Below, piece after piece: positions 21,643 through 47,671 of a stretch of 51,304 nt of DNA. Below the pieces are notes generated by a model. That model did not search any database. It was given only the letters and a program-made list of their open reading frames with translations, and had not been told where the DNA came from. The DNA is from Cyanophora paradoxa CCMP329 (lineage: Eukaryota; Plantae; Glaucophyta). Each line of letters begins with the position of its first letter. The stretch's first letter is position 1. The stretch is from positions 1 through 51,304 of the forward strand of contig QPMI01000543.1 of NCBI GenBank assembly GCA_004431415.1. The letters are read 5' to 3'. Both the position numbers and the translations under genes were made by a program.

Positions 21643-21969
21643 ATTAGAGCTTGGAAGTGAGTGGGCATTGCAATTGCAATGGATATCCTGCGCATGCAAA
21701 CGCGAGTCGCGATCGGATTCAAGCACCGTGTCCGTATACGTATTTGCACCCCTCATGATCAGAACGCGTCTCGAACTCCGGATCGGGGTCTTTGAGCTTG
21801 TGCTTGCAATTGCACGTGGGTCCCTTTTGGGATGTGCCATATATGCATCCCACCCATGGCAAGGCCCCCGATTTGAAACGCGGGATCGACCGGAGCTCGC
21901 GATCGGAACGAATTCGGTGGACGTCGACGTAAATGGGAAACAGCGCACTACGGTACCCTCAGGTTCAGT

Positions 21970-23578
21970 TGCAGGCGGTCTTCTGCTTGGCTTATACAAT
22001 TAATCATGAATAAATCTAAGGAGGGAAAGGGGGAGAGGTGGGGGTGGGGGGCGCTTCAAAATTTCGGGGACACCAGAAATCTAGATCTAGAGCGGCCGTG
22101 GTCTTATATAATTAAGGAGGACTGGACGTCAATGGGAAACGGCGTATCCCCAGGTGCCGAGCTGAGCTTGGCCAGATGGAGAGACGAGGTGGGGGGTCCT
22201 TGAGCGAAGCCTGGACGTAAATGGGAAACGCAGTACCCCCCAAGGGGGCGAGCTGAGCTTGGCCAGAGGAAGAGACGGAGGAGGGGGCCGGGGGCCTTGA
22301 GCGAAGCCTGGACGTAAATGGGAAACGCAGTACCCCCCAGGGGGGCGAGCTGAGCTTGGCCAGAGGAAGAGACGGAGGAAGGGGGACCTTGAGCGAAGCC
22401 TGGACGTAAATGGGAAACGCAGTACCCCCCAGGGGGGGGGGGGCGAGCTGAGCTTGGCCGGAGGGAGAGAGGAGAGAGAGGGGAGGGGGCCTTGAGCGAA
22501 GCCTGGACGTAAATGGGAAACGCAGTACCCCGAGGGGCAAGCTGAGCTTGGCCGGAGGAGAGACGGAGACAGGGGAGGGCGGCCTTGAGCGAAGCTACTT
22601 TCTACTTTCTAGCTGAGCTTGGCCGGAGGGAGAGAGGAGAGAGAGGGAAGGGGGCCTTGAGCGAAGCCTGGACGTAAATGGGAAACGCAGTACCCCCTTC
22701 CCCTCCCATCCACCCTCCATGAGCCAATCCGAGCACATGATCATGATCATCAACGATTATTGCAATAATAATCAATCAAGCAGTAGGAATATTATGAGAT
22801 CGCAGCGTCAGTTTATATCTGCGGTCGATTCTAGATCGGATCCCGTCCCCGCGCGAGCCTTCTCTCTCTAGATTCAGATGTAGATCTCAATCTAAATGGC
22901 ATCGATGCCATGATAATCATATATATGCAGCTGCAGGCGGCAAGGAGAGCTGGGGGTACAGCGTTTCCCATTATCGTCCAGGGCTCCCCTATGGCCGGGG
23001 TGTCCCGCAGAGAGGAGAGCGGGGGTACAGCGTTTCCCATTATCGTCCAGGGCTCCCTATGGCCGGGTGTCCCGCAGAGAGGAGGGCCCCGGGGTACAGC
23101 GTTTCCCATTATCGTCCAGGGCTCCCCTATGGCCGGGGTGTCCCGCAGAGAGGAGAGCGGGGGGGACAGCATTTCCCATTTACGTCCAGGGCTCCCCTAT
23201 GGCCGGGGTGTCCCGCAGAGAGGAGAGCGGGGGGTACAGCGTTTCCCATTATCGTCCAGGGCTCCCCTATGGCCGGGGTGTCCCGCAGAGAGGAGAGCGG
23301 GGGGGTACAGCGTTTCCCATTATCGTCCAGGGCTCCCCTTTGGCCGGGGCCCCCCGCAGAAAGGAGAGCTGGGGGGTACAGCGTTTCCCATTTACGTCCA
23401 GGGCTCCCCTATGACCGGTGTGCCCCGCAGAGAGGAGATCTGCGGGGGACAGCGTTTCCCATTATCGTCCAGGGCCCTCGTACACATGCACATTGCCGGC
23501 CCCGGGGTCCCCGCAGATCTAGAGAGGAGATCTTTGGGGTCAGGGGTTACAGCGTTTCCCATTTACGTCCAGGGCTCC
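21970..23578. repeat. Bipartite repeat module 1 (6 forward cores, type-A centre, 9 reverse cores)
   Basis: CTGGACGTAAATGGGAAACGCAGTACCC at ~22122 (degenerate), 22211, 22308, 22400, 22503, 22668; reverse core GGGTACAGCGTTTCCCATTATCGTCCAG at ~70-bp period from 22953 to 23575. Confidence 0.95.
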
Positions 23579-23972
23579 TCTTTCGAAGCGTGCGCGTGAT
23601 CATGAGACTCTGAGATCGCGGCCATCTTTGGGACTCGGAGCTGTAGACCTCGCCAATCGCGAGTCGCGTTGTGCGCGGGCCGCGGCCGGCCGCGCGCGGG
23701 TCCAAAGTCAACTGTGCTGCATTCAATCATAATTTGCATTTACGTATATATACATTTGCGGCCGTGCGGGCCTTGCCAGCACTCTAGATCTAGATCTAGA
23801 TATAGATTTATCATCGTATGGCGTATGCGGGCCGGGGGCGCGGCGAGCCGGAGCGCGTGCAGCCAGCAGGGCTTGCGGCGCGCGTCGGCGAGCTCCGGCC
23901 GTGGGCCCGGGGCCCGGGGCCCGGGGCTGGCCATGGGCGCGAGGCATGTGCGAGGCGTGAGAGCGGGTGCAG

Positions 23973-24957
23973 CTGCAGGCGGTCTTCTGCTTGGCTTGAT
24001 CATGAATAAATCTAGAGGTGGGGGGCGGGGGGAGGGGGAGGGGGGGGGGGGGGGGGGGGGGGGGGGCAGAGGTAGGGGGGGGGCGCTTTCAAATTTTCGG
24101 GAGCACCAGAAATCTAGATCTAGAGCGGCCTTGAGGGAGGCCTGGACGTAAATGGGAAATAGCGTACCCTCAGATGCAGCTGAAGGCGGGAAGAAGTTTC
24201 GATCTGCTTGGCTTGAATAAATCCTAGAGGGGGGGAGAGGGCAGAGGTAGGGGCGGGGGGGCGCTTTCAAATTTTCGGGAGCTCCAGAAATCAAGATCTA
24301 GAGCGGCCGCGGCCTTGAGGGAGGCCTGGACGTAAATGGGAAACGCTGTAACCCCTGGCACACGAACTGAGTCTAGCCAGGGAGAAGCGGGGGGGGGGAA
24401 GGGGGGGAGAGGGGGGCTTTCTTACAATCACCCATATGCACGGCAGCCCGGCGGCCCCCCCTCTCCCCCCCCCCTCGCCCTCACCCTCCATGAGCCAATC
24501 CGAGCACACTGACATGATCATGATCATCAACGATTATCGCAATAGTAATGATCAAGCACTAGGAATATTAAAATGAGATCTAAGCGTCGACGTCGGTCTA
24601 GATCTAGATCTAGATCTAAATCTGCGGCTGTCAAGACGACACTAGCTATATAGATCAGATCCCGTCCCCCGCACGCGCCTTCTAGATCTCACTCTAGATT
24701 TAGATGTCGCTCTCAATCTAAATGGCATCGATGCCATGATCATCATATGCAGCTGCAGGCTGCAAGGAGAGCTGGCCGTGGGATACAGCGTTTCCCATTT
24801 ACGTCCAGGGCTCCCCTATGGCCGGGGTGTCCCGCAGAGAGGAGAGCGGGGTATAGCGTTTCCCATTATCGTCCAGGGCTCCCCTATGGCCGGGGTCCCT
24901 CGCAGAGAGGATGGCTGTGGGGGTACAGCGTTTTCCATTTACGTCCAAGGCTCCCCT
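23973..24957. repeat. Bipartite repeat module 2 (2 forward cores, type-A centre, 3 reverse cores)
   Basis: Same leader as module 1 (GCAGGCGGTCTTCTGCTTGGCTT...TTCAAATTTTCGGG...); cores at ~24142, 24326 and ~24781, 24849, 24919; centre 24483-24775 homologous to 22712-22950. Confidence 0.93.
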
Positions 24958-26995: not shown

Positions 26996-29900
26996 TCACG
27001 GCCCGCGGTTCTTCCGCGGCCTCCCGCGCGCCCGCGGGGCCCCCGAGCCGCCCCGTACGGCGGCCCCCGCACGCGGCGTCGGAGGAGCGGGGGGCGAGGA
27101 CGGCCCGCCCCCCAGGCCCAGCAGGTCGGAGATGCGGGCCGGGGGCGTGCGGATGTCGACGGCGCCATTGCGGGCATCGTACCTCACCGGCGCGAGGGTG
27201 CGCACGCCCGTCCACTCGCGCGCGCTGCCCTCTGAGCTCGGCGTCCAGAGCGCCCCGAACCGGCGGAGGACGGCCCAGCGCGACTCGTACTCGCCGCTCG
27301 GGAGGCGCACCATCTGCACCAGCCGGGCGAACACGGTCCGGGGCAGCGGGTCCGCCGCGTGCGTCGCCACCGCCGCCGCCACCTGCCCCGGGGGTACGGG
27401 CTCGCGCTGACCCACCTCAGGTGCCACACGGGCCGCGACGGCGGGTCCGCGGGCTGCGCGGCGGGGAGAGCGGGGCGCTCCGGGCCCGGAGACGCCGCGG
27501 GGGAGGCGGCCCGACGCCCCTTGGTCTCCGCCCCGCGTCCCGTCCCCGACGCCCCGCCCCCGCGGCGGGCCCTCGTGCGGCTCCCGCTGCCGTTGGGGCA
27601 GGTCTGCGCGTGCCTTCGGGCCCCCGCCGCCGTCTGAAAGGTCTGGCGTCGGTGAGACGGTGCGCGTGCGCGCGCGCGCGCTCGCTCCCCCTCGCTCGCT
27701 CGCGGAAGGGTGGGGCGGGGCGGGCTCACCCGTCGGCAGGGCTCGCAGTACCGGCCCTCTCCGATTGCGAGGTCGAGCTCCATCTGGTCTCCCGGGTCGA
27801 GGCGCCGCCGCTGCCACGGGAACCGCTTCGGCTTTCGCGGCCGCTCCTCTTCCTCCTCTTCCTCTTCCTCCTCTTCCTCTTCCTCTTCCTCCTCTTGCTC
27901 CTCCTCCTCCTCCTCCTCTTCCTCTTCCTCCTCTTCTTTGCCGCCCTCTGTCTCGCTCCGGCTCCCGCTCCGGCTCCCGCTCCCGCTCCCGCTTCCGCTC
28001 CGGCTCTCCGGCTCCCCTCCCTTTCCGGGCGGGGTACCGCCTCCCCGCGGGGGACGGGCGGCGGTGCGCGGCGGGACCGACGTCGGCGTCGCGCCCGTCG
28101 ACGTCTCGGGAGCGCGGGGCGAGCTCGGAGGCGGCAGAGGGGCGACCGCAAAGGGTACGGCGGTGCGGACGGGTACGGCGGTGGGGACGGGTACGGCGGC
28201 GGGCGCCTCGCCGGGGCCCGGCCCGCCCGGGTCCGGATCGGCGGGGAGGAGGGCCGGCGGCGAGTCGCGGTCGGCGGCCCCCGTGGACCGCTCCCGCTCG
28301 GCGGCGCGGCGGCGCTCGTGCTCCTCGGCCAGGCGCTGGAGGTACGCGACGGCGGCCGTCGCCGTGCGCTGCCGCGCGCTGGCGTCGTAGTGCGTCGTCG
28401 CCGTCTGCGGCGTGTGCGCCAGGAGGCGCGCCACGCCCTCGGTCACCGCCGCCGCCGCGTCCCCCTCGATCAGGTTCACCGCCGCCTGGTCCCGCACGTG
28501 CGTCGTGATGACCGCCCGCATCGTCTTGGCCGTCACAGGCACCCCGGTGTAGCGCACCATCACCTGCGCGCGCGCGCGCGCGGGCGCGCGGGGCGCCGGC
28601 GTCAGCGTCGGCGTCGGGATTCGAGCCCACGCAGTAGGTTCGCTCCCCCTCTTCCCCCCCTCCCCCCTCCCCCCTCCTCCCCCCCCTCCTTCTCCCCCCC
28701 CCCCCCCCCCCCCCCCCCCCTCTTCTCCCCGAGCGCACCTTTCTGACAAAGGCCGCCCAGCCGCTCTCGGAGAGGCAGGTGCCGAGGCTCGAGGCAAAGA
28801 GCCAGCCCTGGTCGGGCCCGCCCGGCGGCAGGAGGAGGGCGCGGAACCGCTCGATGTAGACGTCGAGCGGCCCCTGGAGGCAGTCGGCGATCGGCACGAT
28901 CATCGCGCCGTGGGACCTGCGCGGCCCGGCCTCGGCGCGGGCGGGAGGGGGAGGGGCAGGGGGGTACGAGGGCGCGGGGGCGCGCACTTGGCCGTCTTCG
29001 AGACGAGCTCGCCGGTCTCCCCGTGGCGCATCTCGAGGAGGCTCAGGTGCCACCGCCCGCCGTCGCGGCGCAGCGTGTGACCGATGCGCAGGCGCCGCAC
29101 GACGCCGACGCGGGCCGGCGTCACCGAGATGAACCCGATGAGCACGGCCTCGCGCAGCAGCCGGGCCTTGTCCAGCTCGAGCGGCGCCCGCTCGTACGCC
29201 GCGAGCGCCTCGACCCGCGCGGACAGCACCGCGTCGAACGAGACCCAGTTCGGTCCGCGCGGCCGCCACCCCCGCTGCTGCTTCTTCTCCTTTTCGAGCT
29301 GCGTCTTCAGGTTCCGGAGGGGGCGCGCGTGGGGACCCTCGGAGGACCCTCCGCCCGGCCCGCCCGACGTACCCCCTCCGCCGCCGCCGCCGCCGCCGCC
29401 AGAGGTGCGGGAGCAGACAAAGGTGTAGGCCTGCATGATGCTCTGCGTGTACCCCGCGAGCGTGCCGGGCGCGAGACGGCGCTCCTCGCGCAGGTACTGC
29501 AGGAAGCGGACGTAGATCTCGACAAAGTCGGCCCGCGCCAGCAGGTCCATGGTGAGGGGCCCGACGCGCTCGCGCTCCTTGACGTACCCCAGCAGGCGGC
29601 CGATCGTCCCCACGTCGTTGACGAGCACCGTGCTGCGCTCCGCCGCGCCCCCCTGGCGGTCGGGGTTGAGGGCCGAGGTGCGCCACGCCTGAAACGCCGC
29701 CAGCTGGTTCTTCAGCTCCCGTGACATCTCCGCCTCGCGCAGGGCGTACGGCGCCAGGCGCTCCGGCTCCGGCTCGCCCCCCCCGTCGGCCGCCTCTTCC
29801 TCCTCCTCCTCCCCCTCCCCCTCCTCCTTGCCCTCTCCTCCCTCGGGGGCTTCGAGGGGCCCTGCGTCCTCGCCCTCTTCGGCCTCGGCGGACGATCCCG

Positions 29901-31747
29901 AGGAGCGGGAAGAGGACGAGGAGAGCGAGGGCGGGGGCGGGGGCGAGGGCAAGGGCCCCGGCGGCGCGGCGGCGGGGGCGGAGGAGGAGGAGGAGGGGGA
30001 GGGGCCGGGGCCGGCGGAGGGGCCCCCTACCCCCCGCCGACGGGCGGCTCGGGGGGGTACCGAGGGGGGCGGCGGGGGGAGGACGACGCGCTCGGCGTCG
30101 GGCAGCGAGTCCTCGTCAAAGAGGACGACCTCCTTGTCCACCATCCCGCTCTCCAGGAGCGTCCGGTACGCCTCGCGCTTCTCCGCGATGAAGCGCCCGT
30201 TCTCCTCCGAGATCGCCGCCGACACCGCCTCGCCCCTTCGCACGTAGGCCAGGCTCCCCGCGGAGATCTCGTCGCCCCAGGGGAACCCCGTCATCACCTC
30301 CGTCGTGAGCGCCTCGGCGAACCAGAGCGTCCACGGCCCGCACTGGTACCCGTCCCCGACCTGCAGGCGCCCGCGCGTCTCCGTGACGAAGCGGTAGCGG
30401 GGAAAGGCGGCCTTGCAGGCGCGCTCGAGCCTGGGGTCGGGCGGGCCGCCGAGCGAGTCCCAGAAGCGCGTCTGCTTCGACGCCCCGTCCACCGCGAGGA
30501 GGGTCCAGTGGCCCCCGCTCGATCCCCCTGGGTGCGCTCCCCGCCGCGCCTCAGGTTGCCACGCTGACGGGGCAGAGGACGCAGGTCCCGCGCTCGGCGG
30601 CGCCCAGGGCCCTGCGCGCCCGCCGCGCCTCGTCGGCGCGCGCGTACCGGAGCAGCAGCGACGTCACGATCTCGACGTGCATGGGGTAGAGGGCCTTGAT
30701 CCGTCCCCCGGCGCCGGCGCGGAGCAGCAGCAGCGTGAGGACGTTGGCGATCTCGGCGTCGCGGAGCCAGCTCTTGCGGCCGAAGATCGAGATGCGGCGG
30801 GCCAGCGGGAGGGGCCGGGAGGGCCCCGCAGCGGCCACGGCGGCCGGGTCCGCCCCCTCGAGCACGAGGCGGGCCCTCTGGAACTCGGCGGCCAGCCCCT
30901 CTCTCCGGTCCGGCAGCGCCCCGAGGAAGCGCTCCGCCCCCAGGGCGCTGACAAAGGCCCACCTGCGCGCAGATCCGTGCGTCGCGACGTCGGCCCCGAG
31001 GCCGCCGTAGTGGACGAGGGTGCGGGTGAGGAGGGCGAGCCGCTCGCGCCCCACCGTCCGCGTGCTCGCCTCGAAGCGGTGCGGCCCGCCCACCGCGAGG
31101 TCCGGGTGCCGCCTCATGATCTCCATCCGGACGCAGTTCGTGGAGCGCGAGTCCCCGTAGGCCGCCTGGGCGAGGCTCGCCAGCGGGATCCACCACTCGA
31201 GCTCCGGCACCTGCGTACCCCCCCCGGCCCCCACCGTTGCCGGCGGCGATGGGGAGGGGGGTACAGGGGTACGCACCTCGATCCGCCGCGCGCGCACGGC
31301 CAGGAACCGATCCCCCGCGGCGCGCAGGACCTGCATCTCGAGGCGCTCGAGACGGGCCTGCCTCCGGCGCTCCAGCGCGGCGTAGAGCTCGGCCGCCGCG
31401 CGGTGCATGCGCCCGTCCTGCGAGCGCTCCCACGTGTTGCTCACGATCGGCTCGACGTAGCGCAGGGGCAGGACCCGCGGCGGCCGCTCCTGCGCGTCGT
31501 GCACGTTGCGCGCGATGGCGCCCAGCGTCTCCAGGAGGAGGATGGCGTTTTCGTCGGGCAGCGGGCGCGTCGGGACCCGGTGCGCCTCGGTGAGCGCCTC
31601 GTCGCCGCTCGCGATGCCCAGCAGACGCCTGAGCTCGGCCGTGCAGACGCAGGGGCCGGCGTCCGTCCGCAGGACCACGAGGCGGGCCGGCCCGTACGGG
31701 CCCTCGAACTCGGCCAGCTCGTACGTGTCCGTGACCGCGGAGAACAT
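26996..31747 (-). CDS. Spliced multidomain protein: Ulp1/SENP-type (C48) cysteine protease + tyrosine recombinase + acidic tract + C2HC zinc finger + AT-hook
   Basis: Protease motifs WLRDAEI, GGHWTLLAVD, FWDSL, QVGDGYQCG. Recombinase motifs TPARVG (R), SKTAKSHG (K), AKTMR (K-x-x-R), LLAHT (H), TTHYD (Y). Inferred GT-AG introns 31211-31276, 28917-28987, 28564-28738 and 27643-27729; splicing restores KTAKSHG and CEPCRRTFQTAAGARRHAQTC. C-terminal RGRPRK. Unresolved frame changes near 30560 and 27400. Confidence 0.82.
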
Positions 31748-32589
31748 TCTCTGCTCCCCGCGGCCGCCCCTCTCCGAGGTCGGGCGCGCGGGGGGCTTTT
31801 AGTCGCGGCGCCCCGGCCCCTCTCGGGCCTTTGTCGGCCCCTTAGTTGCAGTACCCTGAGGCCTTTGCCGGTCCGCTTCATTGCAGTACCCCTGCCTTCC
31901 TCGCGACCTCGCATTCATTGCTGTACCCCTGCCCGCCTCGCTTCCCCCACCTCCTTTCCCGCCCCTCGGAGCCGCTTCCGAGGCCTCGCTCCGCGCGCCT
32001 TGTGCGGCGCGAGCGCCGGCGCCGAGCGCGCTATCAGCGTAGAACGGTGTGCGGAGCACGCACGGCACCTTTCCGCGCCGTTTGCGCGCGTCTGGAGCGC
32101 CCCTGGGGGGAGGGGGGCCCCCCCGGGGTCGCGATCGAAGGCCGAAAGAGGGGCCGCATATACCGCACTAAAATTAGCATCAATTAGAGGGGGTCCCCTG
32201 CATGCCTTCGACGGCCTTTGTGCGGATCCGAAAATTCATTTGACCCCTTTTTCGGGGGGGGTGGGACTGGTATGGCACCTTTTGATTATCGTTTTGTTAA
32301 ATGAGCGGGATCGATCCGATCCGCACTAAGCCACTTTTTAAGAGTAAAGCGGGTCCCTGCATGCCGAATTCGAGCTCGGTGCCCAGCGGATCGGAAATCG
32401 GGTCTCGCCGGCGGCCCCCGGGGACCCCCTCGGAAACCGTTCCTAGGGCGGGCGCCGGCCCAAACGCACCGCCAGGAGTCGAGAGCGCGGCTATCAACAG
32501 GGATGAACGCGCAGAGGCTGCCGGCACCCTTCTTCGTGCGGGCCGGGGTACGCGTGCGGTTCTGCGGGAGGCTCTCATCTTCGAATCAT

Positions 32590-32616
32590 GGGTTCGAATC
32601 CCGGCGGGAGACTTTT
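32590..32616 (+). promoter_or_regulatory. Isolated Pol III B-box-like motif followed by TTTT
   Basis: GGGTTCGAATCCC matches the GGTTCGANTCC consensus; no tRNA cloverleaf upstream; similar motifs at ~14873 (+) and ~19292-19304 (-). Confidence 0.3.
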
Positions 32617-32782
32617 GTCCTGCGAGCAGAGCGGCGCTTTCCACGCCAATAGCCATGCTCCTCGGCCGCGGCGTCGCTCTCTCGGCGCGCCCCGTGCGCG
32701 TGCGCGCGTTGAAAAGGGACCCCGAGCGAGTCGGCTCCTCGGCGCGCTCCACGAGGTCCGCACCCGCAGACGCTCTCGGAGG

Positions 32783-34039
32783 ATGGCCCGCATCAAGCAG
32801 ACGGTGAGCGAGAGCGCCCGCCCCGCGCTCTTCTCCTCGTCCTCGTCGTCCGCCTTGCAGCCGATCATATGCATCGTGTCTCATGTCCGCCGTCTCTCGC
32901 AGGCAAAGAAGAGCACCGGCGGCAAGGCGCCGCGCAAGAAGCTGGCTACCAAGGCGGCCCGCCGCTCGGCTCCGGCGGCAGGCGGGGTGCGTGATGTCGC
33001 AGCGCGCGTCGCGTCCCAGCCGGAGCGCCGGCGCCGCATCCCGCGGCCGGCGCGTCTAACGTGTGCGCATGCGCACCGCAGGTGAAGAAGCCGCACCGCT
33101 ACCGCCCTGGTCGTCTCCCTCCCCGCCCCGCGGCCGCGCTCTAGCTCAATGCAAGCTACGCCACATGCATGCATGCACGCATACACGCAGCTATAGCTAG
33201 CTATAGATGCACCCCGCCCGCGCGCGCCGCTCCGGCCTCTCTCTCTCTCTCGCTCGCTCTCACCGATTCCTGACGCGCGTACCGCGCCGGTCGTCGGGCG
33301 GCGGCGGCGACGGAAAGGCACGGTGGCGCTCCGCGAGGTGCGCATGCATGCCGAGCCTACCGTAGCTGAGCCGACTCTGCGCCTGCGCGCCGCCTGATCC
33401 CGCGTCGCATCGCAGATCCGCAAGTACCAAAAGGTGGGCGCTGCCGCCGCGCTGCCGCCGGCCCGCCGCCGCGGGGCCCGGGCCCCGTGGCCCCGGGATC
33501 GTTCGACTGAGACCGCGGACGCAGACGACGAACCCGCTGATCCCCTACGCGCCCTTTAAGCGCCTCGTCCGCCTTCCCGCCCCCTTTTCCCGCCGCACCC
33601 CCGCACTCCCTGCCACGTCGTTTTCGCGCCCGCGCGGCGCAGGTCCAGGAGATCGGGAGCGAGATTGCCAAGGAGAAGAACGAGGAGGGGGCAGACCCCA
33701 AGATCGAGCTCCGCTGGACGCGCGAGGCCATCGAGTGCCTGCGCGAGGCCAGCGAGATGGTCCGCCGCGTTTGCGCCCCGGCCCCGCCCCCTCGACCCCA
33801 AGGGCGCGCTTCCCACGCTCGCTTTGCCCGCCTCTGCGCAGCAACTCATCAAGCACTTTGAGGAGGCGAACCTCTTGGCGATCCACCGCAGGCGCATCAC
33901 CATCCAGCCCAAGGTGCGGCCCCCGCCACCGCCAAGCCCCTGCGCCCGACCCCTGCCCCGCGCGCTCCGTTCTGTCCAGGACATTCAGCTCGCCCGCCGC
34001 ATCCGCGGCGAGCCTGCGACGGAGCCCACGGCCTCCTGA
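32783..34039 (+). CDS. Histone H3 variant, 153 aa, 9 exons; canonical-type tail on a CenH3-like histone fold
   Basis: Exons 32783-32803, 32903-32986, 33082-33109, 33318-33337, 33416-33433, 33525-33566, 33643-33759, 33842-33913, 33980-34039, all introns GT-AG. Product: [153 protein letters not shown]. Confidence 0.95.
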
Positions 34040-34393
34040 TCGCGACGGCGGCGGTCCAACAGCGGTCCGCGCAGAGGCCCGTCTCGGTCCGTCGCCCCTG
34101 CCCTCCTCTCCTTCGCCCCCCTTTCCCCGTACCCCCCCACCCCCCCACGCCGAGCCTCACCGGCGCGCGCGGCCGTGGCCAGCTCCGGGCTTGGCCGAGA
34201 GCCGGCGAGCCTGGCGTCGCCCTCCCTCCCCCTTCTCTCCCCCCCTCCCCCCCCCCCCCCCCCTTCCCCCCTCCTGTTTCTCTCCCGACTCGCCGCTCTC
34301 TCCCTCGTGCGAGAGCACCGCTGCTTCTGTACAGCAATGACCACACCGCACGCATACCCCCCGGGCCCTGTCTAAGAGGCGCGCGTCTAAGAG

Positions 34394-35675
34394 GGCGGCT
34401 TTGAGCGAAGCCTGGACGTAAATGGGAAACGCAGTACCCCCAGGGGGCGAGCTGAGCGTGGCCGGAGGGAGAGAGGAGAGAGGGGGGAGGGGCGGCCTTG
34501 AACAAAGCCTGGACGTAAATGGGAAACGCAGTACCCCAGGGGCGAGCTGAGCTTGGCCGGAGGGAGAGAGGGGGGAGGGGCGGCCTTGAGCAAAGCCTGG
34601 ACGTAAATGGGAAACGCAGTACCCCCAGGGGGGCAAGCTGAGCTTGGCCGGAGGGAGAGAGGAGAGAGAGAGGGGGCAGCTTTGAGCGAAGCCTGGACGT
34701 AAATGGGAAACGCAGTACCCCCAGGGGGGCGAGCTGAGCGTGGCCGGAGGGAGAGAGGAGAGAGGGGGGAGGGGCGGCCTTGAACAAAGCCTGGACGTAA
34801 ATGGGAAACGCAGTACCCCCAGGGGAGCAAGCTGAGCTTGGCCGGAGGGAGAGAGGGGGGAGGGGCGGCCTTGAGCAAAGCCTGGACGTAAATGGGAAAC
34901 GCTGTACCCCCAGGGGGGCGAGCTGAGCGTGGCCGGAGGGAGGGGGGGGGGGGGGGGGGGGGCGGGGGGCGGCCTTGAGCAAAGCCTGGACGTAAATGGG
35001 AAACGCAGTACCCCCAGGGGGGCGAGCTGAGCGTGGCCGGAGGGAGAGACGGGAGAGGGGGGAGAGCAGAGAAATGCAGGGCCCCAGGCGAGCTCCCCCC
35101 TCTCCCTCTCCTCCTCCCATCAGCCAAACGGAGCACACGATCGGCGATAGTCATCATGATCAATATTACCTGCACAAGCGAACGGTCCCGATACTCATCT
35201 TATCTAGAACTTCCAGCTTCTGAGCCTCACGATCAGCACCTAGATTTCAATTAGCCCTAGGCCTTCTTTCTCCTATGGTCCGTCTCTCGCTTTTTAATTT
35301 CAAGCTCATGATCGATTTCGATATATATTGCCGCTGTCCAAAGTCGAATCTTTTGTTGTGAAATCAAACTTCTGGCAACTCTCCTCCGCAGAGAGGAGGG
35401 TCCCGGGTACGAAGTTTCCCATTATCGTCCAGGCCTCCCCTATGGCGGGCCGGGAACGCTCCGGATCTGCAGAGAGGAGGGCCCCGGGGTACAGCGTTTC
35501 CCATTATCGTCCAGGCCTCCCTATGGCGGGGCTGCCCCGCAGAGAGGAGATCTGCGGGGGTACATCGTTTCCCATTATCGTCCAGGGCTCCCCTATGGCG
35601 GGGGCGCTCCGCAGAGAGGAGGGGCGTGGGATACAGCGTTTCCCATTATCGTCCAGGGCTCCCCTATGGCCGGGG
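34394..35675. repeat. Bipartite repeat module 3 (7 forward cores, type-B centre, 4 reverse cores)
   Basis: Forward cores at ~34412, 34509, 34597, 34693, 34791, 34882, 34986; centre ~35065-35400; reverse cores at ~35405, 35486, 35557, 35628. Confidence 0.95.
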
Positions 35676-36362
35676 CGCCCTGCAGATATAGAGAGCTCGA
35701 GGCCTCGGGTTCGATCCGCGACCGGGCTCGATCTCTTCTAGATCTGGATCCGCGGGGCCCGGGGATTCCGGTCGCTTGCGCTTCTTCGGGGGCCGGGCCC
35801 GCGCGGCGCCCGCCGATTGCGAGCTCGAGCTCGCGCCGCGGCGCCCCCAGCGGGCGTCCAGCGCGCGCAGGACCGCGCCCGGGTCGGACGCGTACTGGGT
35901 GGAGAGCTGGCGTGCCGCCCGCTGGACGATGCGGCTGCCGAGCGGGCCCTGGTACGCGTCGAGGAACATGAGCAGGTCGAGGAGCTCAAAGTACGCCCCG
36001 AGGTCGGGCGGCTCGCGCTCGGGGGGCCACGTTCCAAACGCGGCGGCGTTGGCGAGGCGCACGGTGGCCGCCGAGGCGGGGAGGTCGACGGGGACCGTCC
36101 CGGATCCGGACCCGGCCGCCGCGACGGCGTCGCTGCACTCGAGCACCGACCCGAGCAGCCGCGAGTACCCCACGAGGGCGGCGCAGAGGGGCACGCTCTC
36201 GCCGTCGGGGGTGCAGCGCGCCACGAGGGCGGGACCAAGATCGAGATCCAGGGGCGGGGCCGGCGCGCGCGCAGCGGGCGGCAGATGTAGAGTCTGCGGG
36301 GGTAGCGCCCGGGGCGAGAGCGCGAGGTGGGGTGCGCATGCGGTGTGCGTGGAGGTGCTCAT
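35664..36362 (-). CDS. Skp1/BTB(POZ)-like protein with basic NLS
   Basis: CTPDGESVPL...YSRLLGSVLE...VPVDLPASAATVRL...YFELLDLLMFLD parallels the Skp1/ElonginC pattern (SSDG..F....S..I..M....IPL....LFEL..AA.YL); PPKKRKR near the C-terminus. Confidence 0.6.
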   Translation of the reverse strand: MSTSTHTACAPHLALSPRALPPQTLHLPPAARAPAPPLDLDLGPALVARCTPDGESVPLCAALVGYSRLLGSVLECSDAVAAAGSGSGTVPVDLPASAATVRLANAAAFGTWPPEREPPDLGAYFELLDLLMFLDAYQGPLGSRIVQRAARQLSTQYASDPGAVLRALDARWGRRGASSSSQSAGAARARPPKKRKRPESPGPADPDLEEIEPGRGSNPRPRALYICRAPRP

Positions 36363-40146: not shown

Positions 40147-41675
40147 ATGGCCCAACAGAGTCGATTGCGAGTGTGAGTGCACAGGAGATCTAGAGCTCTA
40201 CGCCTCCACGTCGGCGAGGGCGGCTGCGTGCACAGCGCCTCCACTAGTACTGGCATTCAAGAGTCCAATCGCAACGAAATCGAGTCCGATTTCCGATATC
40301 GATTACACGCGGGGCCTCGGATACACGGGCCTACATCTACAGCTCTACGCGTCCACGTCGTCGAGGACCGCGATGCGGACGGCGGGGTGCGCGCAGAGGA
40401 TCTGGTACGCCTCGACAAAGGCGCCGCGGAGCTCGTCGCCCTCGAGAGGGATGCGGCTCTCGAGGAGGTGTCGTGGACGGCGATGGGGTGCCGAACCGGA
40501 TGCGGAGGAAGCGGTGCTCGTAGGCGGCGGCGGCGGCGGCGGCGCGCTGGAACGCGAGCCCTCTGTTCGAGACGACGACGAGCGTCTTCGTCACGCCGTC
40601 CCAGATGCGGCCCAGGCGCGCGGTGGAGAACAGCGGCTCCTCGCGCACGACGAGCGCGCGCGCCGTCTCGCAGCGCGTCGTGGTCCATTGCGCAAACTTG
40701 CGGTTCTTCATCTCTTTCTCGCCGACATCCACGACGGCGTCGGCCCCGCCGGGCAGCAGCAGCTTGGCGACGGTGGTCAGGCAGTTGACGGCGAGCGTCT
40801 TTCCCGTGACGGTGAGCCCCTCGATGGAGAGCGCCGTCTTTCGGAAGCCGTCGTTGCCTCCGCCGACGAGGGCGCGGCCGTAGAGGGCGAAGACGGCGAG
40901 GATCCGCCTGTCGGCAAAGCCCTGGTCGCGTAGCACGCGGACGAGAACGGTGTCGGCGCGCCCGACGTACACCGCGTCGCCAGGGTTTGCGAGGTCGATG
41001 TTCCAACGCGGCGTCGCGATCGCCATGATCGTGATGGCTCGGCGCGTCGCGCTAACTTGGAAACGTTGACGCGACGGGTGCGAGCGTGCTAGGGTGCACG
41101 GCCGCGGTTTGCAGTGCGGAGCTCGCTCGGGGCCGCCTTTTATACTGCGGGCCGCGGCGGGCCCCGCGAGAATTCGAATTTCCAAAGAGTTGACGGGACG
41201 GGTACGCCCCTCGCGGTCGCTCATGATCGGACGGCCCTGCGTCGACGATCATACGAGCGCCCGCGTTCGAACTCCTATATACAGCTACACGCGGACGCGC
41301 GTGCGAATTCAGAGACCATCGGACGAGCTCCCGATCGGGGCGTCGGCCCGACGCCATGGCCCAACAGAGTCGATTGCAATTGCGAGTGTGAGTGCACAGG
41401 AGATCTAGAGCTCTACGCCTCCACGTCGGCGAGGGCGGCTGCGTGCACAGCGCCTCCACTAGTACTGGCATTCAAGAGTCCAATTAATCGCAACGAAATC
41501 GAGTCCGATTTCCGATATCGATTACACGCGGGCCTCGGATACACGGGCCTACATCTACAGCTCTACGCGTCCACGTCGGCGAGGACCGCGATGCGGACGG
41601 CGGGGTGCGCGCAGAGGATCTGGTACGCCCCGACAAGTGTTTTTAAAGGGGCCGAGGAGCTCGTCGCCCTCGAGA
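40147..41675. repeat. ~300-bp direct repeat pair (about 40147-40445 and 41356-41675)
   Basis: Near-identical CATGGCCCAACAGAGTCGATTGC...GAGGATCTGGTACGCC blocks; they contain the 3' end of the intervening gene, indicating a tandem duplication. Confidence 0.9.
40337..41026 (-). CDS. Hypothetical intronless protein
   Basis: Globular-looking ORF (MAIATPRWNIDLANPGDAVYVGRADTVLVRVL...); TATAAAA on the minus strand about 110 bp upstream; probable frameshift near 40480 into GDELRGAFVEAYQILCAHPAVRIAVLDDVDA*. Confidence 0.55.
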   Translation of the reverse strand: MAIATPRWNIDLANPGDAVYVGRADTVLVRVLRDQGFADRRILAVFALYGRALVGGGNDGFRKTALSIEGLTVTGKTLAVNCLTTVAKLLLPGGADAVVDVGEKEMKNRKFAQWTTTRCETARALVVREEPLFSTARLGRIWDGVTKTLVVVSNRGLAFQRAAAAAAAYEHRFLRIRFGTPSPSTTPPREPHPSRGRRAPRRLCRGVPDPLRAPRRPHRGPRRRGRVEL

Positions 41676-41862: not shown

Positions 41863-42827
41863 CTACGGTACGGCGGCGCCCGCGGCGCCGGCCGCGGCTG
41901 GGCATGGCCGAGTGTCCTGCGCCGCTAACCGCTCCTTGAAATCGCGCGCGGCCGCGCGCACCGCCGTCGGCGAGACTCCCGCCGCGTGCGAGATCCTGCG
42001 AAAGCTCCAGCGTCGGGTCAAAGCCGACGTCGATTGCGCTCGCGGCGTCGACGGCTTGCTCGCAAGGGCCAGGGCGGCGACGGCGAGACTTTCGGGCGAC
42101 CTCGAAAATGGGCGGGGGGCACGGCTCGCTGCGGTTCGGAAGAGCTCCTGCGCGCGGGCAATGGTCGCTCGGTCGAATTCAATGCGTCGTCCTATGGAAC
42201 GGATGATCTCTTCCGTCATGCCGTACCCTGCCACCATTTGCTGACCGAATTGTGCGCTCAGGGAGCGGATCATGCGCTGCAGCTCGCCCCGAGTGAAAGA
42301 GGCCGTGCCGCCGCACGCGCACAGGTCGCCCTGCTCCAGAAACTCCCGGAGGAGGCGGGGGATCCCGCGAATCTGGACGGCGGCGTACAGCGCGGCGATG
42401 GCGAGGACGTCGTAGCGCCGCCCGTTGACGATTCCCGTGCGCTCGTCGGACTCGCACAGAATTTCAAAGGCCTGGAGCGCGACGCTCTCGGGAAGCGACA
42501 TGCGCTCCGCAATATCGTGCACGGTCGCGAGCAGGTTCTGGCGGTCCGCGCACGCGGAGCGCGCTCGCACCGCGCCCCGCCCTCGAGCTCGCCTCTGGCC
42601 GGCGCCGCGGCCGAGGCGTCCGTCGCCCGCGAGCGCGCCGCATTGGCGTTGCAAAGCACACGTGCACGTGCTTGCCCATGTGCATTCCACGCACATTCCC
42701 CCATGCCGCGTGTACGTGCGCAGCGCCGGGCCCTCGAACGCGACGCCCACGCACGCGCCGCAAACGGTGCACACCGGCCCTCGGGCGTGGACGCGACGAA
42801 AGGGTGCGGGCAGGTCTTGGATTCCAT
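41863..42827 (-). CDS. TFIIB/TFB-family transcription factor (zinc ribbon + two cyclin repeats), 1-nt frameshift near 42780
   Basis: CPH...VCTVCG ribbon; IAERMSLPESV...GRRYDVLAIAALYAAVQIRGIPRLLRE; RSPESLAVAAL...ISHAAGVSPTAVR. Confidence 0.85.
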
Positions 42828-42939
42828 TTCCGGTCTGTGAAATGCGGTACGAGAGAGATCGCGTCGTCTTTTATCCCTCGCTGCAATCGGGCCGACCGCG
42901 TCAGAAATCAAAGTTCCAAGTTCGCGCGTGGTCATGTAT

Positions 42940-43629
42940 GCGCATCATACGATCAGCGCTGGCGACCCGGCATACGTGGTCATATGCATGGGCCGCGTGC
43001 ACGTGCACGACGCCAACGACTCGAAGAATCGCTGCCGCATGCACGGTCGTGTGACGAGAACAAAGCAGGTGAATTCCGTTTGTTTCCACGTCTAAATGAA
43101 AATTTCGACACACGTGTACATGTACAAGGCTACGCGTGCATATGCGAGCAGCGAGGGGTACGGTCTGCGCGAGACACGGCACGGAGCCGAGCAGCCTCGT
43201 AGAGGGCGGCACGGAGGGCGAGGCCCCCGTACGCGCGGCCGGCGGTGCGCCCATGGCCATCCGGCTCCGCGTCAGAGTTGATGTGGGACCCCGACTCGTT
43301 CAGGATGCCGAGGGCCCGGCGCGCGGCGCTCCTCGGCCGCGGGAGCGACATGCGCTCCGCCGTCTCGCGCAAGGCGGTCAGCAGCTCTAGATCTCGGCCG
43401 TCTCGGTGGGCCTTGCAATTGGGCGACGTCGTCGAGCCGCCGCCGCGGCCGTCGGTTCCGGGCCCGTGCGCGTCGCGTTCGTTGAACGAATCGACGACCC
43501 TAGAGCCTGCGTATCCTCGCCCCTCAAACTCGAATTCGAACGCGACGCCCACGCACGCGCCGCAGACGGTGCACACCGGCCCTCGGGCGTGGACGCGACG
43601 AAAGGGTGCGGGCAGGTCTTGGCTTGCAT
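42940..43629 (-). pseudogene. TFIIB-like paralogue 2, degraded
   Basis: MQAKTCPHPF../VCTVCGACVG...LRETAERMSLP...GRAYGGLALRAALYEAARLRAVSR, then stops. Confidence 0.75.
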
Positions 43630-43839
43630 TTCCGGACTGTGGAATGATGGATGGCAGTGCTCGACACGCTTATATCCGGTGCCAGAGGGCCAGTTGCAAC
43701 GCCGACAAAGGCGTGGGCACGTGTTGATTGAAACAATGAATTCAAACGTATACTCAATATGTATACATGCGATGTCATTATAATATAAGAACGCGCAGGG
43801 CTGGAATGTAGATGTCGTCCTCGAGCGTGCTCATGTATA

Positions 43840-44546
43840 CGCATTATACGATCAGCGCTGGCGACCCGGCATATGTGCACGTGGTCATATGCATGGGCCG
43901 CGTGCACGTGCACGTGCACGACGCCAACGACTCGAAGAATCGCTGCCGCATGCACGGTCGTGTGACGAGAACAAAGCAGGTGAATTCCGTTCAAACGGTT
44001 TGTTTCCACGTCTAAATGAAAATTTCGACACACGTGTACAAGGCTACGCGTGCATATGCGAGCAGCGAGGGGTACGGTCTGCGCGAGACACGGCACGGAG
44101 CCGAGCGGCCTCGTAGAGGGCGGCACGGAGGCGAGGCCCCGTACGCGCGGCCGGCGGTGCGCCCATGCCATGGCCATCCGGCTCCGCGTCAGAGTTGACG
44201 TGGGACCCCGACTCGTTCAGGATGCCGAGGGCCCGGCGCGCGGCGCTCCTCGGCCGTGGAGCGACATGCGCTCCGCCGTCTCGCGCAAGGCGGTCAGCAG
44301 CTCTAGATCTCGGCCGTCTCGGTGGGCCTTGCAATTGGGCGACGTCGTCGAGCCGCCGCCGCGGCCGTCGGTTCCGGGCCCGTGCGCGTCGCGTTCGTTG
44401 AACGAATCGACGACCCTAGAGCCTGCGTATCCTCGCCCCTCAAACTCGAATTCGAACGCGACGCCCACGCACGCGCCGCAGACGGTGCACACCGGCCCCT
44501 CGGGCGTGGACGCGACGAAAGGGTGCGGGCAGGTCTTGGCTTGCAT
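43840..44546 (-). pseudogene. TFIIB-like paralogue 3, degraded (second copy of a ~900-bp tandem duplication)
   Basis: About 43830-44743 repeats about 42930-43826; intact MQAKTCPHPFVASTPEGPVCTVCG ribbon, then frameshifts. Confidence 0.75.
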
Positions 44547-44986
44547 TTCCGGACTGTGGAATGATGGATGGCAGTGCTCGACACGCTTATATCCCGGTGC
44601 CAGAGGGCCAGTTGCAACGCCGACAAAGGCGTGGGCACGTGTTGATTGAAACAATGAATTCAACGTATACTCAATATGTATACATGCGATGTCATCATAA
44701 TATAAGAACGCGCAGGGCTGGAATGTAGATGTCGTCCTCGAGCTCGGCCCGGGCGAGAGCAGACTCTGGGAGGCGACGTCGGTGCACGTGGCTATAAGCA
44801 CCCAGGGCCCGCCTATGGCCAGATCTAGACGTCGAGGCCACGGGTGCTGTGGTGCGGATCGGATGATGACCAAGTCCGGCACGCATCGCAAGAATATTAA
44901 TCCCGCTGGCACGTGCACGACCATATGCATGGCCAGCAGACCTTCCAGCCCCCTGGGCCCCCGCCCTCGACGCACGCACTTTTCCC

Positions 44987-46081
44987 GTGCATGCTGCAGG
45001 CGCTGTCGCGACGCTCGCACAAAATAGGGACATCGACTCTGGCGGTACGCGCATCGACGATCGCGAGCTCGAGCTCGAATCTGGATCTCCGCTGTCAGGC
45101 AAGGACAATCTTCTCGAGCCCGTCCGTGCCGATGCACATGTGCATGTGCATGTGCCGACGTCGGCGCTTGCAAGCACGTGCGCGAGCACGGGCGGCGCGG
45201 AAGAGGGCGACCTCAAGCCCGAGGCTGCGGCGGCAGCTGCAGTTACCGCTGCGACCGCGTCCACGGATCGGGAGGCCGATCGCGAGCCGGAGTCGGACCG
45301 CGCAGATGTCGACGCCGATCGCGACAAGCTCAGGCGCGAGCGCGAGGAGGCCGGGAGCACCGGTCCGGATTCGGCGCGCAACGTCGACGTCTGCACCGAT
45401 CAAGAGGGTACACGCGGTGCGCCAGTGGCCAGTCATGATCATGATCAGCAAACGCATGCGCGCGCGCAATCTCCGGCGCGCGCAGTCATCGGGCCGGATC
45501 TGCAAGCTCCGAATTCTAATTCGGACTCCGGCGCCCACAGCGCTAGCGCGGGTGTCCCGGCAGGCCCCGCCCGCGGCGACGTGGACGGCATGCGCACCGA
45601 CAAGAGCTCCCCCGCCGCCCAATCCCTCTCGGGCGCGGCGGAGCTCTCCGCGAAATTTGGCTGCAAGCAGCCCGTCGTGTTTCTCCTCGGCGGCGCCAAG
45701 CCCAGCTCTGCCTACGTGGGTTGCTGCTGCAATCTCAAGCGCAAATTTGCGGAGCTGCGCGGGTCGGGGCTCCTGGACATGACGCGCGACCGAGGCCCCT
45801 GGAAGATTCGGGCCGTCGCGCACGGATTCCCGAACGAAAACGTCGCCAAAGCTTTTCAGATGCTCCTCGAGTCCAAGTGCCGCAGCAGCGGGGTGAGCAA
45901 GAAGCTGCGGGTGATGCGCGAACTCACAGAGGATTTTTCGGCGATCTCCGGCGAGCCGCGCGCTGGTGACGCGGGGCGATCCGCGTCGAGGTGGACGCCG
46001 ACGGCGACGCGCATGCTCTACGAGTCGGAGAGTAGGCGAATGGAGCTCGCGCATCCCGTATCCCGTAGTACATACATGTAG
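44987..46081 (+). CDS. GIY-YIG-like protein with degenerate active site and long disordered N-terminus
   Basis: VVFLLGG...AYVGCCCNLKRKFAEL...RDRGPWKIRAVAHGFPNENVAKAFQM aligns by eye with the 18183..18779 protein; start uncertain. Confidence 0.7.
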   Translation: MHAAGAVATLAQNRDIDSGGTRIDDRELELESGSPLSGKDNLLEPVRADAHVHVHVPTSALASTCASTGGAEEGDLKPEAAAAAAVTAATASTDREADREPESDRADVDADRDKLRREREEAGSTGPDSARNVDVCTDQEGTRGAPVASHDHDQQTHARAQSPARAVIGPDLQAPNSNSDSGAHSASAGVPAGPARGDVDGMRTDKSSPAAQSLSGAAELSAKFGCKQPVVFLLGGAKPSSAYVGCCCNLKRKFAELRGSGLLDMTRDRGPWKIRAVAHGFPNENVAKAFQMLLESKCRSSGVSKKLRVMRELTEDFSAISGEPRAGDAGRSASRWTPTATRMLYESESRRMELAHPVSRSTYM

Positions 46082-46339
46082 ACGGCGCCGGCATACGCAC
46101 GAGCTCGAGCGTACGCGTGTCGCACAGAGGTTCATATGCAGTGCAGCCGCACTTTCACGCGGGCCATCCGAGTCGCTATATTTATCTTATATGGTTTGAT
46201 AGGCTTTTTTTTGGAAAGCCTGTTGCATTCGTACACACTTGACAACAGTCCCCGCTCCTCGCCTACCGGATACTGGGATGCTGACTGCAGGAGGAGATAG
46301 ATGACAAGAGTGCTACAGCTAGTATTCGTGTCGAGCTGG

Positions 46340-46856
46340 TGCTTGAGCTTGGCCAGAGGGAGAGAGGAGAGAGAGAGAGAGGGCAGCTTTGAGCAAAGCC
46401 TGGACGTAAATGGGAAACGCAGTACCCCCAGGGGGGCGAGCTGGCGTGGCCGGAGGGAGAGAGGGAGGAGGAGCCCCTTGAGCGAAGCCTGGACGTAAAT
46501 GGGAAACGCAGTACCCCCAGGGGGGCGAGCTGAGCTTGGCCGGAGGGCGAGAGGAGAGAGAGGGAGAGAGAGGGCAGCTTTGAGCAAAGCCTGGACGTAA
46601 ATGGGAAACGCAGTACCCCAGGGGGCGAGCTGAGCTTGGCCGGAGGGAGAGAGGAGAGAGAGAGAGAGAGAGGGCAGCTTTGAGCAAAGCCTGGACGTAA
46701 ATGGGAAACGCAGTACCCCCCAGGGGGGCGAGCCTCGGAGCTGAGCTTGGCCGGAGGGAGAGAGGGAGGAGGAGCCCCTTGAGCGAAGCCTGGATGTAAA
46801 TGGGAAACGCAGTACCCCCAGGGGGCAGGCTGAGCGTGGGCGGAGGGAGTGACGGG

Positions 46857-46914
<58 letters not shown>

Positions 46915-47590
46915 CGGGGGCAGAGAAATGCAGGACCCCAGGCGATCTCCCCCCTCCCTCTCCTCCTCCCATCAGCCAAACGGAGCACATGATCGGCGAT
47001 AGTCATTATGAGCAATATTAATATTACCTGCAGAACTGAATGCGTATGGTCCCAACCTAGAATGCCTCATGATCATCTTATCTAGAACTTTCAGCTTCTG
47101 AGCCTCACGATGCGCATCTAGATTTAAATTAGCCCCTCTTTCTCCTATGATCCGTCTCTCGCTTTTCCTGCTTGGAATGTCTTTCTTGAAGTTTCAAGCT
47201 CATGATCGATTTCGATATATATTGCCGCTGTCCAAAGTCGAATCTTTTGTTGTTAAAACAAACTTCTGGCAACTCTCCTCTGCCGAGAGGAGGGCCCCGG
47301 GGTACAACGTTTCCCATTATCGTCCTGGGCTCCCTATGGCGGGCGGGGGGCGCTCCGGATCCGCAGAGAGGAGGGCCCGGGGTACAGCGTTTCCATTATC
47401 GTCCAGGGCTCCCCTATGGCGGGCGGGGGCGCTCCGGATCCGCAGAGAGGAGGGCCCCGGGGTACAGCGTTTCCATTATCGTCCAGGGCTCCCCTATATA
47501 TGGCGGGGGCGCCTCCGCAGAGAGGAGGGCCCCGGCTTTCACGCGGGCCATCCGAGTCGCTTTATATATATTATATGGTTTGATAGGCGT
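46340..47590. repeat. Bipartite repeat module 4 (5 forward cores, long G tract, type-B centre, 3 reverse cores)
   Basis: Forward cores at ~46400, 46489, 46591, 46691, 46790; centre ~46920-47295 homologous to 35065-35400; reverse cores at ~47299, 47379, 47459. Confidence 0.95.
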
Positions 47591-47671
47591 GCCCGTCGCC
47601 AGTCGTGTATATATCGATATCATAGTATGCAACCTAGGCCTCGAGCTCTTTATATCATACCGTCGTCCTCT

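What the first reader, a model, noticed from the sequence alone, without database searches (positions are those of the whole stretch)
32783..34039. Chimeric-looking histone H3: canonical tail with K27R on a CenH3-like fold, head-to-head with the recombinase
Seen: an intact 9-exon gene. The tail is nearly canonical (K4, K9, S10, K14, K36 kept) but has T3I and K27R. The fold has Q68K, F84W, T107A, IPYAPF in place of IRKLPF, C110L and an 11-residue loop-1 insertion. Known: loss of Q68, W at 84, a non-Thr at 107 and a longer loop 1 are CenH3 hallmarks, but CenH3 tails are normally unalignable to H3; K27 is the PRC2 target and T3 the Haspin site. Inference: an element-borne histone that might resist Polycomb silencing and/or give excised circles centromere-like segregation, possibly on the repeat arrays.
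Basis: partly seen in the sequence, partly recalled or inferred. Interest (0 to 1): 0.85.

Follow-up and report, generated by a model that had tools for sequence, protein, structure and literature searches.

The report
Mobile-element histone H3 variant in Cyanophora
An alga carries several near-identical copies of an odd histone H3 gene that sits beside a recombinase in a repeat-bounded, virus-like DNA segment, suggesting that a selfish element brings its own DNA-packaging protein.

Summary
The gene is real: nine exons, all GT-AG, 153 aa, and every listed substitution checks out. The host is the glaucophyte Cyanophora paradoxa, whose public proteome holds at least four near-identical copies; at a second locus the downstream neighbour came along. 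It is therefore not a single-copy host CenH3. It sits head-to-head (1,035 bp) with a protease-recombinase gene, frameshifted here, inside a 10-kb unit bounded by motif arrays, among TFIIB and GIY-YIG genes. First, the 'CenH3 fold' is not diagnostic: trees do not place it with CenH3s, residues shared by CenH3s (Q85, Q93) are lost, Cyanophora has a family of such long-loop H3s plus a more conventional CenH3 candidate, and a giant-virus H3 combines a normal tail with the same hallmarks. Second, PRC2 and H3K27me3 are unconfirmed in Cyanophora. Best reading: an element-borne replacement H3, analogous to singlet viral H3s, that alters nucleosomes on the element or host. Expression, mobility, and recombinase linkage at other copies remain untested.

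The parts
32783..34039 (+). H3 variant gene, 9 exons, 153 aa: near-canonical tail (T3I, R8K, Q19K, K27R), strongly diverged fold with +11 loop 1, short polar C-terminal extension
   Evidence: (Pfam Histone E 3.5e-29 for P0001)
33643..33759 (+). Exon 7: end of helix 1, the 11-residue loop-1 insertion, W84 and the altered chaperone patch 85-90
   Evidence: low-confidence model extends helix 1 to residue 83
31748..32782 (.). 1,035-bp divergent intergenic region between the two start codons; candidate bidirectional promoter (inferred); holds one tRNA B-box-like 11-mer at 32591 that is not above chance
26996..31747 (-). Multidomain gene: unassigned N-terminal domain, CE-clan (Ulp1-like) cysteine protease, tyrosine-recombinase-like core, Cys/His finger, C-terminal domain with AT-hook; frameshifted near 30560 in this copy
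   Evidence: (protease E 5e-5); unbroken paralog P0124 is 67-76% identical
24780..24957 (-). Left motif array of the H3-recombinase unit (68-71 bp period, core motif pointing outwards)
34393..35062 (+). Right motif array of the unit (7 copies, about 95 bp period, same 26-bp core pointing outwards), 372 bp after the H3 stop
35063..35400 (.). AT-richer spacer between converging arrays, related to the spacers at 46.9-47.3 kb and (inverted) 51.1-51.3 kb; candidate element end or recombination site (inferred)
35402..35686 (-). Motif array opening the next unit (71-82 bp period)
35664..36362 (-). Unassigned 232-aa ORF (P0127); a copy differing by a 2-residue indel is annotated next to the H3 copy on another contig
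   Evidence: no structure hit
41863..42827 (-). TFIIB-like gene in the adjacent unit, apparently frameshifted near its 5' end, with two partial duplicates at 43.1-44.7 kb
   Evidence: (Pfam TFIIB E 1.6e-10)

Best explanation
The gene is the histone of a multi-copy, repeat-bounded, virus-like mobile element (or element cluster) in Cyanophora paradoxa, and one member of an older Cyanophora family of long-loop H3 variants. SHOWN: intact host-style gene; several near-identical copies; co-duplication with its downstream neighbour; location beside a protease-recombinase gene inside a 10-kb unit with outward-pointing motif arrays at both ends; kin at about 60% fold identity. INFERRED: the shared upstream region turns on recombinase and histone together; the protein pairs with host H4 and replaces H3 in some nucleosomes; the tail can still carry K4, K9 and K36 marks but not K27 methylation or acetylation nor T3 phosphorylation; changed DNA contacts (63-65, 114-115), H3-H3' interface (110) and chaperone patch (85-90) give a looser or separately deposited nucleosome. 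The likeliest use is keeping the element's own DNA open or diluting host silencing when it is active, as proposed for singlet H3s of giant viruses. It works like a selfish replacement histone; it is not shown to be a CenH3.
For: Gene integrity. One protein sequence under three C. paradoxa accessions plus a fourth copy. Neighbour P0128 (g23063) next to H3 copy P0002 (g23064). One copy lies four to six gene numbers from ordinary host genes (g3860 vs g3864, g3866), a setting not seen in this window, so copies seem dispersed. Unbroken paralog of the recombinase gene elsewhere. Protease triad and recombinase-type R, K, xxxR, H, Y motifs present in the window copy. Array geometry. No ortholog in other organisms; next best 50-55%. 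Paralogs evm1s8071 and evm1s4222 share the motif after K56, W84, a 10-11 residue insert and exon ends (compared by eye). Giant-virus H3s often alter K27 or S28, one has K27R, and one (L042) shares 9 derived fold residues with a normal tail.
Against: No expression evidence; no transcript-derived sequence in the P0001 cluster. The search on the recombinase's last exon found only one distant paralog and none at accessions next to the other H3 copies, so H3-recombinase linkage is shown for this locus only (fragmented gene models could hide it). Recombinase assignment is statistically weak (Pfam E 0.02; Cre hits E 0.23 on a poor model). The recombinase and TFIIB copies here are frameshifted. No target-site duplication or att site was identified. 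PRC2 in the host is unconfirmed. The assembly has 34.7 Mb of duplicated sequence, so some copies may be segmental or redundant.
Confidence: 0.5

Rival explanations
1. A silent passenger: a divergent host H3 paralog captured in repeat-rich, methylated DNA and recently multiplied by segmental duplication or assembly redundancy, with no present function tied to the recombinase.
For: No expression shown; neighbours frameshifted; 21% of C. paradoxa genes are methylated and mostly silent (PMC12344493); 34.7 Mb of duplicates in the assembly; recombinase linkage unproven at other copies.
Against: Eight clean introns, GC3 0.91, tail 52/56 identical to a host H3 while the fold is far away, and paralogs at about 60% identity keeping insert length and exon ends point to long purifying selection.
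Confidence: 0.2
2. Remnant of an endogenous large DNA virus (nucleocytovirus- or mirusvirus-like) whose singlet H3 has gained host introns.
For: TFIIB, GIY-YIG, CE-clan protease and mostly intron-poor orphan ORFs nearby; closest pattern of derived residues is a nucleocytovirus H3; histones are core mirusvirus genes (PMC12768974).
Against: No capsid, DNA polymerase or other hallmark found in the window; ten window ORFs have no tblastn hit in 101 fetched loci, most of them viral; no relatives in IMG/VR; tree link to L042 is weak (86/11, unresolved); the mirusvirus host survey does not mention Cyanophora.
Confidence: 0.15
3. A CenH3-derived protein with centromere function: either the element builds a kinetochore on its arrays to segregate excised circles, or this family is the host's CenH3 and the arrays are centromeric DNA.
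For: S57T, R63P, L65A, Q68K, F84W, T107A, long loop 1; fold scores as well to S. pombe Cnp1 as to H3 (97 bits each); AU test does not reject a clade with CenH3s (p 0.26); host candidate evm1s556 also has A65, K68, W84; tandem arrays beside the gene.
Against: Canonical tail; Q85 and Q93 lost, no His at 102, E133 kept, C-terminus polar rather than hydrophobic (CENP-C preference from own knowledge); 59-63% identity to CenH3-like rows versus 63-67% to canonical rows; hallmarks recur in viral H3s; arrays are under 1 kb and look like element ends; no partition or replication gene identified.
Confidence: 0.15

Closest known systems
Singlet H3 histones of giant viruses and xenomavirus (PMC9145170, section 'Single H3 histones')
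   Same: A lone H3 on a selfish genome, thought to assemble with host histones; tail marks largely kept. In IMG/VR loci fetched here K27 is often replaced (13/22 kept versus 22/22 for K4; K27R in L076/L077) and L042 has a normal tail with P63, A65, non-Q68, W84, A107.
   Different: Those are 73-89% identical in the fold, on viral genomes with hallmark genes; this one is about 59%, has eight host-type introns, an 11-residue loop insert, and is chromosomal and multi-copy beside a recombinase.
CenH3 / CENP-A
   Same: Non-Q68, W84, non-T107, long loop 1, fold identity near 60%.
   Different: Tail alignable and nearly canonical; Q85, Q93 lost; loop insert +11 versus +1 to +3 in the four comparators; at least four copies; not grouped with CenH3s in trees.
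K27-immune host variants (Arabidopsis H3.15, K27H; H3.10) (PMC10426802)
   Same: H3 variant that cannot take H3K27me3 and could dilute the mark.
   Different: Those are host developmental genes with near-canonical folds in a species with proven PRC2; here the gene is element-associated, the fold is highly diverged and host PRC2 is unconfirmed.
Tyrosine-recombinase elements of eukaryotes (Cryptons, Starships, DIRS, recombinase-type Polinton-like viruses) (own knowledge)
   Same: Intron-containing recombinase gene, cargo genes, multi-copy.
   Different: Recombinase fused to a CE-clan protease and AT-hook; no Starship captain, reverse transcriptase or capsid hit; ends marked by arrays of a 26-bp motif; carries a histone, which I found described for none of these.

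Membership tests
CenH3 | N-terminal tail not alignable to H3 | tested here: not met
   38/44 identical to reference H3; 52/56 to host H3 evm1s8247 by eye
CenH3 | No Q68, W at 84, non-Thr at 107 (hallmark list from own knowledge) | tested here: met
   K68, W84, A107; also met by viral L042 and L032, so not specific
CenH3 | Longer loop 1 | tested here: met
   23 versus 12 residues for 73-84; comparators 13-15
CenH3 | Fold only 50-60% identical to canonical H3 | tested here: met
   53/90
CenH3 | Groups with CenH3s in a fold phylogeny | tested here: inconclusive
   Long unplaced branch; AU p 0.258; only 83 columns, 4-5 comparators, host CenH3 not available by reference
CenH3 | Conserved helix-2 residues and hydrophobic C-terminus of CenH3 comparators | tested here: not met
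   Q85T, Q93R, K at 102, E133 kept, polar C-terminus
CenH3 | Single or low copy host gene | tested here: not met
   At least four near-identical copies
CenH3 | Centromere localisation, kinetochore recruitment | not testable with these tools
   needs tagging and ChIP
Viral singlet H3 | Lies in a genome with virion or replication hallmark genes | tested here: not met
   none found in the window; rest of the contig set not available
Viral singlet H3 | Fold 73-89% identical to eukaryotic H3 | tested here: not met
   about 59%; range from PMC9145170
Tyrosine-recombinase mobile element | Recombinase with catalytic R, K, HxxR, H/W, Y | tested here: met
   motifs at 29121, 29001, 28530 (Lys in place of the first His), 28425, 28398; weak profile and fold support
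Tyrosine-recombinase mobile element | Dispersed multiple copies with the recombinase | tested here: inconclusive
   H3 and right neighbour multi-copy; one distant recombinase paralog; pairing at other loci not seen
Tyrosine-recombinase mobile element | Defined ends (att site or target duplication), empty sites, circles | tested here: inconclusive
   motif arrays bound the unit but no att core or duplication was found; genome not searchable
PRC2-evading H3 variant | Residue 27 cannot be lysine-methylated | tested here: met
   R27
PRC2-evading H3 variant | Host has PRC2 and H3K27me3 | tested here: inconclusive
   no core PRC2 found, blot inconclusive (PMC5405695); later surveys did not give an answer in the held files

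The most novel reading that the evidence does not exclude
A nuclear, recombinase-mobilised element family encodes its own histone H3, expressed together with the recombinase, and deposits it on its motif arrays to make element-specific chromatin: K27-proof nucleosomes that escape silencing, possibly also a private centromere-like tether for excised circles. The several long-loop H3s of Cyanophora would be the histones of different element subfamilies.
Probability: 0.25. Interest if true: 0.88.

Novelty: new variant of a known kind. Interest (0 to 1): 0.62.

Why it matters
Selfish genomes are known to carry chromatin readers, anti-silencing proteins and, in viruses, histones; a chromosomal recombinase element with its own intron-bearing H3 was not found in the literature searched. 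If expressed it offers a natural test of whether swapping the histone itself is an anti-silencing strategy. It also warns that best-hit 'cenH3' labels (seven in Cyanophora) can be element-borne variants, and that the usual CenH3 hallmarks arise convergently on selfish H3s.

Tried and rejected
Mirusvirus endogenisation recalled from memory: the survey does not mention Cyanophora; dropped as a claim. Profile search with exon 7 alone gave only repeat-protein noise. Genomic context of the other copies could not be fetched. Exact look-ups of ten more ORFs found nothing. Array motif and recombinase absent from viral and metagenome collections. No tRNA or Rfam RNA in the window; the B-box-like 11-mer is within chance. 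Single-sequence folds were poor (pLDDT 61 and 41) and fold searches non-significant. My guesses of a helicase at 40.3-41.2 kb, a BTB/Skp1 fold for P0127 and a Bro-like N-terminus got no database support. A recent tail swap from host H3 was considered: kin share a hydrophobic residue 3 and the same exon ends, so uneven constraint explains the mosaic as well; not excluded.

Full report
Observation. Translating exon by exon confirms a nine-exon gene from 32783 to 34039 with eight GT-AG introns (66-208 nt, seven in phase 0), 153 codons and GC3 of 0.91. The tail also has R8K and Q19K, and the fold differs from canonical H3 at 32 aligned positions, including Q85T, S86R, S87E, M90E, Q93R, G102K, A114R and K115R. 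One failed script joined the exon DNA locally to count codons and printed none of it.

Source and copy number. The exon-7 search returned two EukProt proteins of Cyanophora paradoxa. P0001 equals the model apart from one Arg from an alternative exon-3 donor and is filed under three accessions; P0002 is a fourth copy with a mis-spliced middle. Intron size and density match that genome (mean 86 bp, 9.2 per gene; PMC6704402). The ORF just downstream in the window (35664-36362) has a cluster mate differing by a two-residue indel, annotated as g23063, next to P0002 at g23064: the duplicated stretch spans the histone, the repeat module and the next gene. The copy g3860 lies a few gene numbers from a universal stress protein and HEATR3, which I did not find in this window, so copies appear to sit in different surroundings (inference). 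No close relative exists outside Cyanophora; next hits are 50-55% identical in the fold.

Neighbourhood. A minus-strand gene starts 1,035 bp upstream. An unbroken paralog elsewhere in the genome (P0124, 1,346 aa, 67-76% identical) shows its plan: unassigned N-terminal domain, CE-clan protease (E 5e-5 to solved ChlaDub structures), tyrosine-recombinase-like core, Cys/His finger, C-terminal domain and AT-hook. Recombinase support is modest but consistent: Phage_int_SAM_1 E 0.02, repeated Cre matches on a poor model, box-II alignment to rhizobial plasmid proteins and the R, K, xxxR, H, Y motifs in the window copy. The window copy is frameshifted near 30560, by decay or assembly error. A 26-bp motif occurs about 40 times, in arrays that converge on short spacers at 22.1-23.6, 24.3-25.0, 34.4-35.7 and 46.3-47.5 kb, with an inverted copy at the window end. 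The DNA thus falls into units with outward-pointing arrays at both ends; histone and recombinase share one 10.4-kb unit, and the next 11.6-kb unit holds a Cys-rich ORF, TFIIB (E 1.6e-10) and a GIY-YIG-like ORF. This resembles subterminal repeats of mobile elements (own knowledge), but no att core or target duplication was found. The recombinase search found no copy at accessions next to the other histone copies; gene models in this region are fragmented, so linkage elsewhere is open.

Host H3 set. A published table for the 2012 assembly lists two canonical H3s and seven divergent ones auto-labelled cenH3 (10.1101/2021.11.30.470311, file 7). These sequences have no tool reference, so they were left out of all tools and compared by eye only. 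The window tail (1-56) differs from host evm1s8247 at just T3, R8, Q19 and K27. Two entries are clear kin: evm1s8071 (47 of 77 identical over 57-122, same 11-residue insert, K27 kept, tail eroded) and evm1s4222 (10-residue insert); their model ends and skips fall at the same exon borders, and both have a hydrophobic residue 3. evm1s2376 and evm1s2610 are more distant long-loop forms. evm1s556 looks like a conventional CenH3 (unalignable tail, K68, W84, loop +3). So the gene belongs to an older lineage-specific family; K27R is not family-wide, and a recent tail swap is not needed to explain the mosaic.

Is it a CenH3? The fold scores equally against H3 and S. pombe Cnp1. In trees of 83 fold columns it is a long unplaced branch; forcing it with four CenH3-like rows costs 7.2 log units, p-AU 0.26. 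It is 59-63% identical to those rows and 63-67% to canonical rows. It has the classic hallmarks but lacks Q85, Q93, a His at 102 and a hydrophobic C-terminus. Membership fails on tail and copy number and is unresolved by phylogeny.

Viral parallel. IMG/VR scans gave 55 H3-like proteins, 34 after removing near-copies. In the first set of 22, K4 was kept in all, K9 in 18, K36 in 17, K27 in 13 and S28 in 6; the search pattern favours intact N-termini and the whole 19-35 stretch is variable, so this is not proof of selection on K27. L076/L077 carry K27R. L042, on a contig with capsid, VLTF3 and RNA polymerase genes, has a normal tail with P63, A65, C68, G75, W84, M98, A107 and I117, the largest share of the window gene's derived residues (9 of 32), though their tree link is weak. 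A normal tail on a CenH3-looking fold therefore recurs on selfish genomes without implying centromere function. Window ORFs have no hits in these loci, and no viral hallmark was found in the window.

Mechanism. Most likely (0.5) this is an element-borne replacement H3: switched on with the recombinase from the shared upstream region, assembled with host H4, readable at K4, K9 and K36 but not at K27 or T3, and forming atypical nucleosomes through changed DNA contacts, dimer interface and chaperone patch. Gene, copies, neighbours and family are shown; co-expression, deposition and effect are inferred. The Polycomb part is uncertain because core PRC2 was not detected in Cyanophora and its H3K27me3 blot was inconclusive (PMC5405695), while CpG methylation of repeats is documented (PMC12344493); K9, the usual partner of such silencing, is kept. 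Rivals: silent duplicated passenger (0.2), endogenous large-virus remnant (0.15), centromere function (0.15).

Verdict. Real and unusual; a new variant of a known theme (selfish singlet H3s, K27-immune variants), in a setting, a chromosomal recombinase-protease element, for which I found no description in ten literature searches. Interest 0.62.

Noticed in passing
window 22122-23600, 24325-24957, 34393-35686, 46366-47535, 50746-51304: Modules of converging arrays of one 26-bp motif around two types of spacer cut the region into units; 47113-47665 and 50593-51304 form a 93% identical inverted pair that runs to the window end.
   Followed up: partly
window 26996-31747 (-) and P0124: CE-clan protease fused to a tyrosine-recombinase-like core, Cys/His finger and AT-hook; no relative outside Cyanophora found; a candidate new element family in its own right.
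   Followed up: partly
window 41863-44750: TFIIB-like gene followed by two partial tandem duplicates of about 915 bp carrying its zinc-ribbon end.
   Followed up: no
window 18183-18779 (-) and 45095-46135 (-): Two GIY-YIG-type ORFs (first Pfam E 1.3e-9, second by eye), each next to a repeat module; they resemble each other in the C-terminal motif.
   Followed up: no
window 47672-48431 and 49989-50290: Further tandem arrays (110 bp x 7; 121 bp x 2.5) inside the 4-kb unit bounded by the inverted pair.
   Followed up: no
window 40164-40418 and 41379-41636: Direct repeats of about 250 bp flank the unassigned 40340-41029 ORF, like a small insertion or local duplication.
   Followed up: no
window 1-22000: Lower-GC (50-62%) stretch of orphan, intron-poor ORFs (673 aa at 19978-21999, ankyrin-like at 10244-11551) with no Pfam or PHROG hits.
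   Followed up: no
L035 8001-8405 and L039 7931-8335: Giant-virus H3s with Met at position 27, the substitution known to inhibit PRC2 in animals (own knowledge); others have S, T, L, N or R there.
   Followed up: no
L090 780-1076: A nucleocytovirus contig (VLTF3, cap methyltransferase, helicase) encodes an H3 with unalignable tail, V68, W84, long loop and His 102: a CenH3-looking viral histone.
   Followed up: no
L001 3283-3690: Intronless H3 (P0010) lacking the K27 region, with W84 and A107, between a SET-domain-like ORF and a Pif1-like helicase fragment; apparently another element-borne H3.
   Followed up: partly
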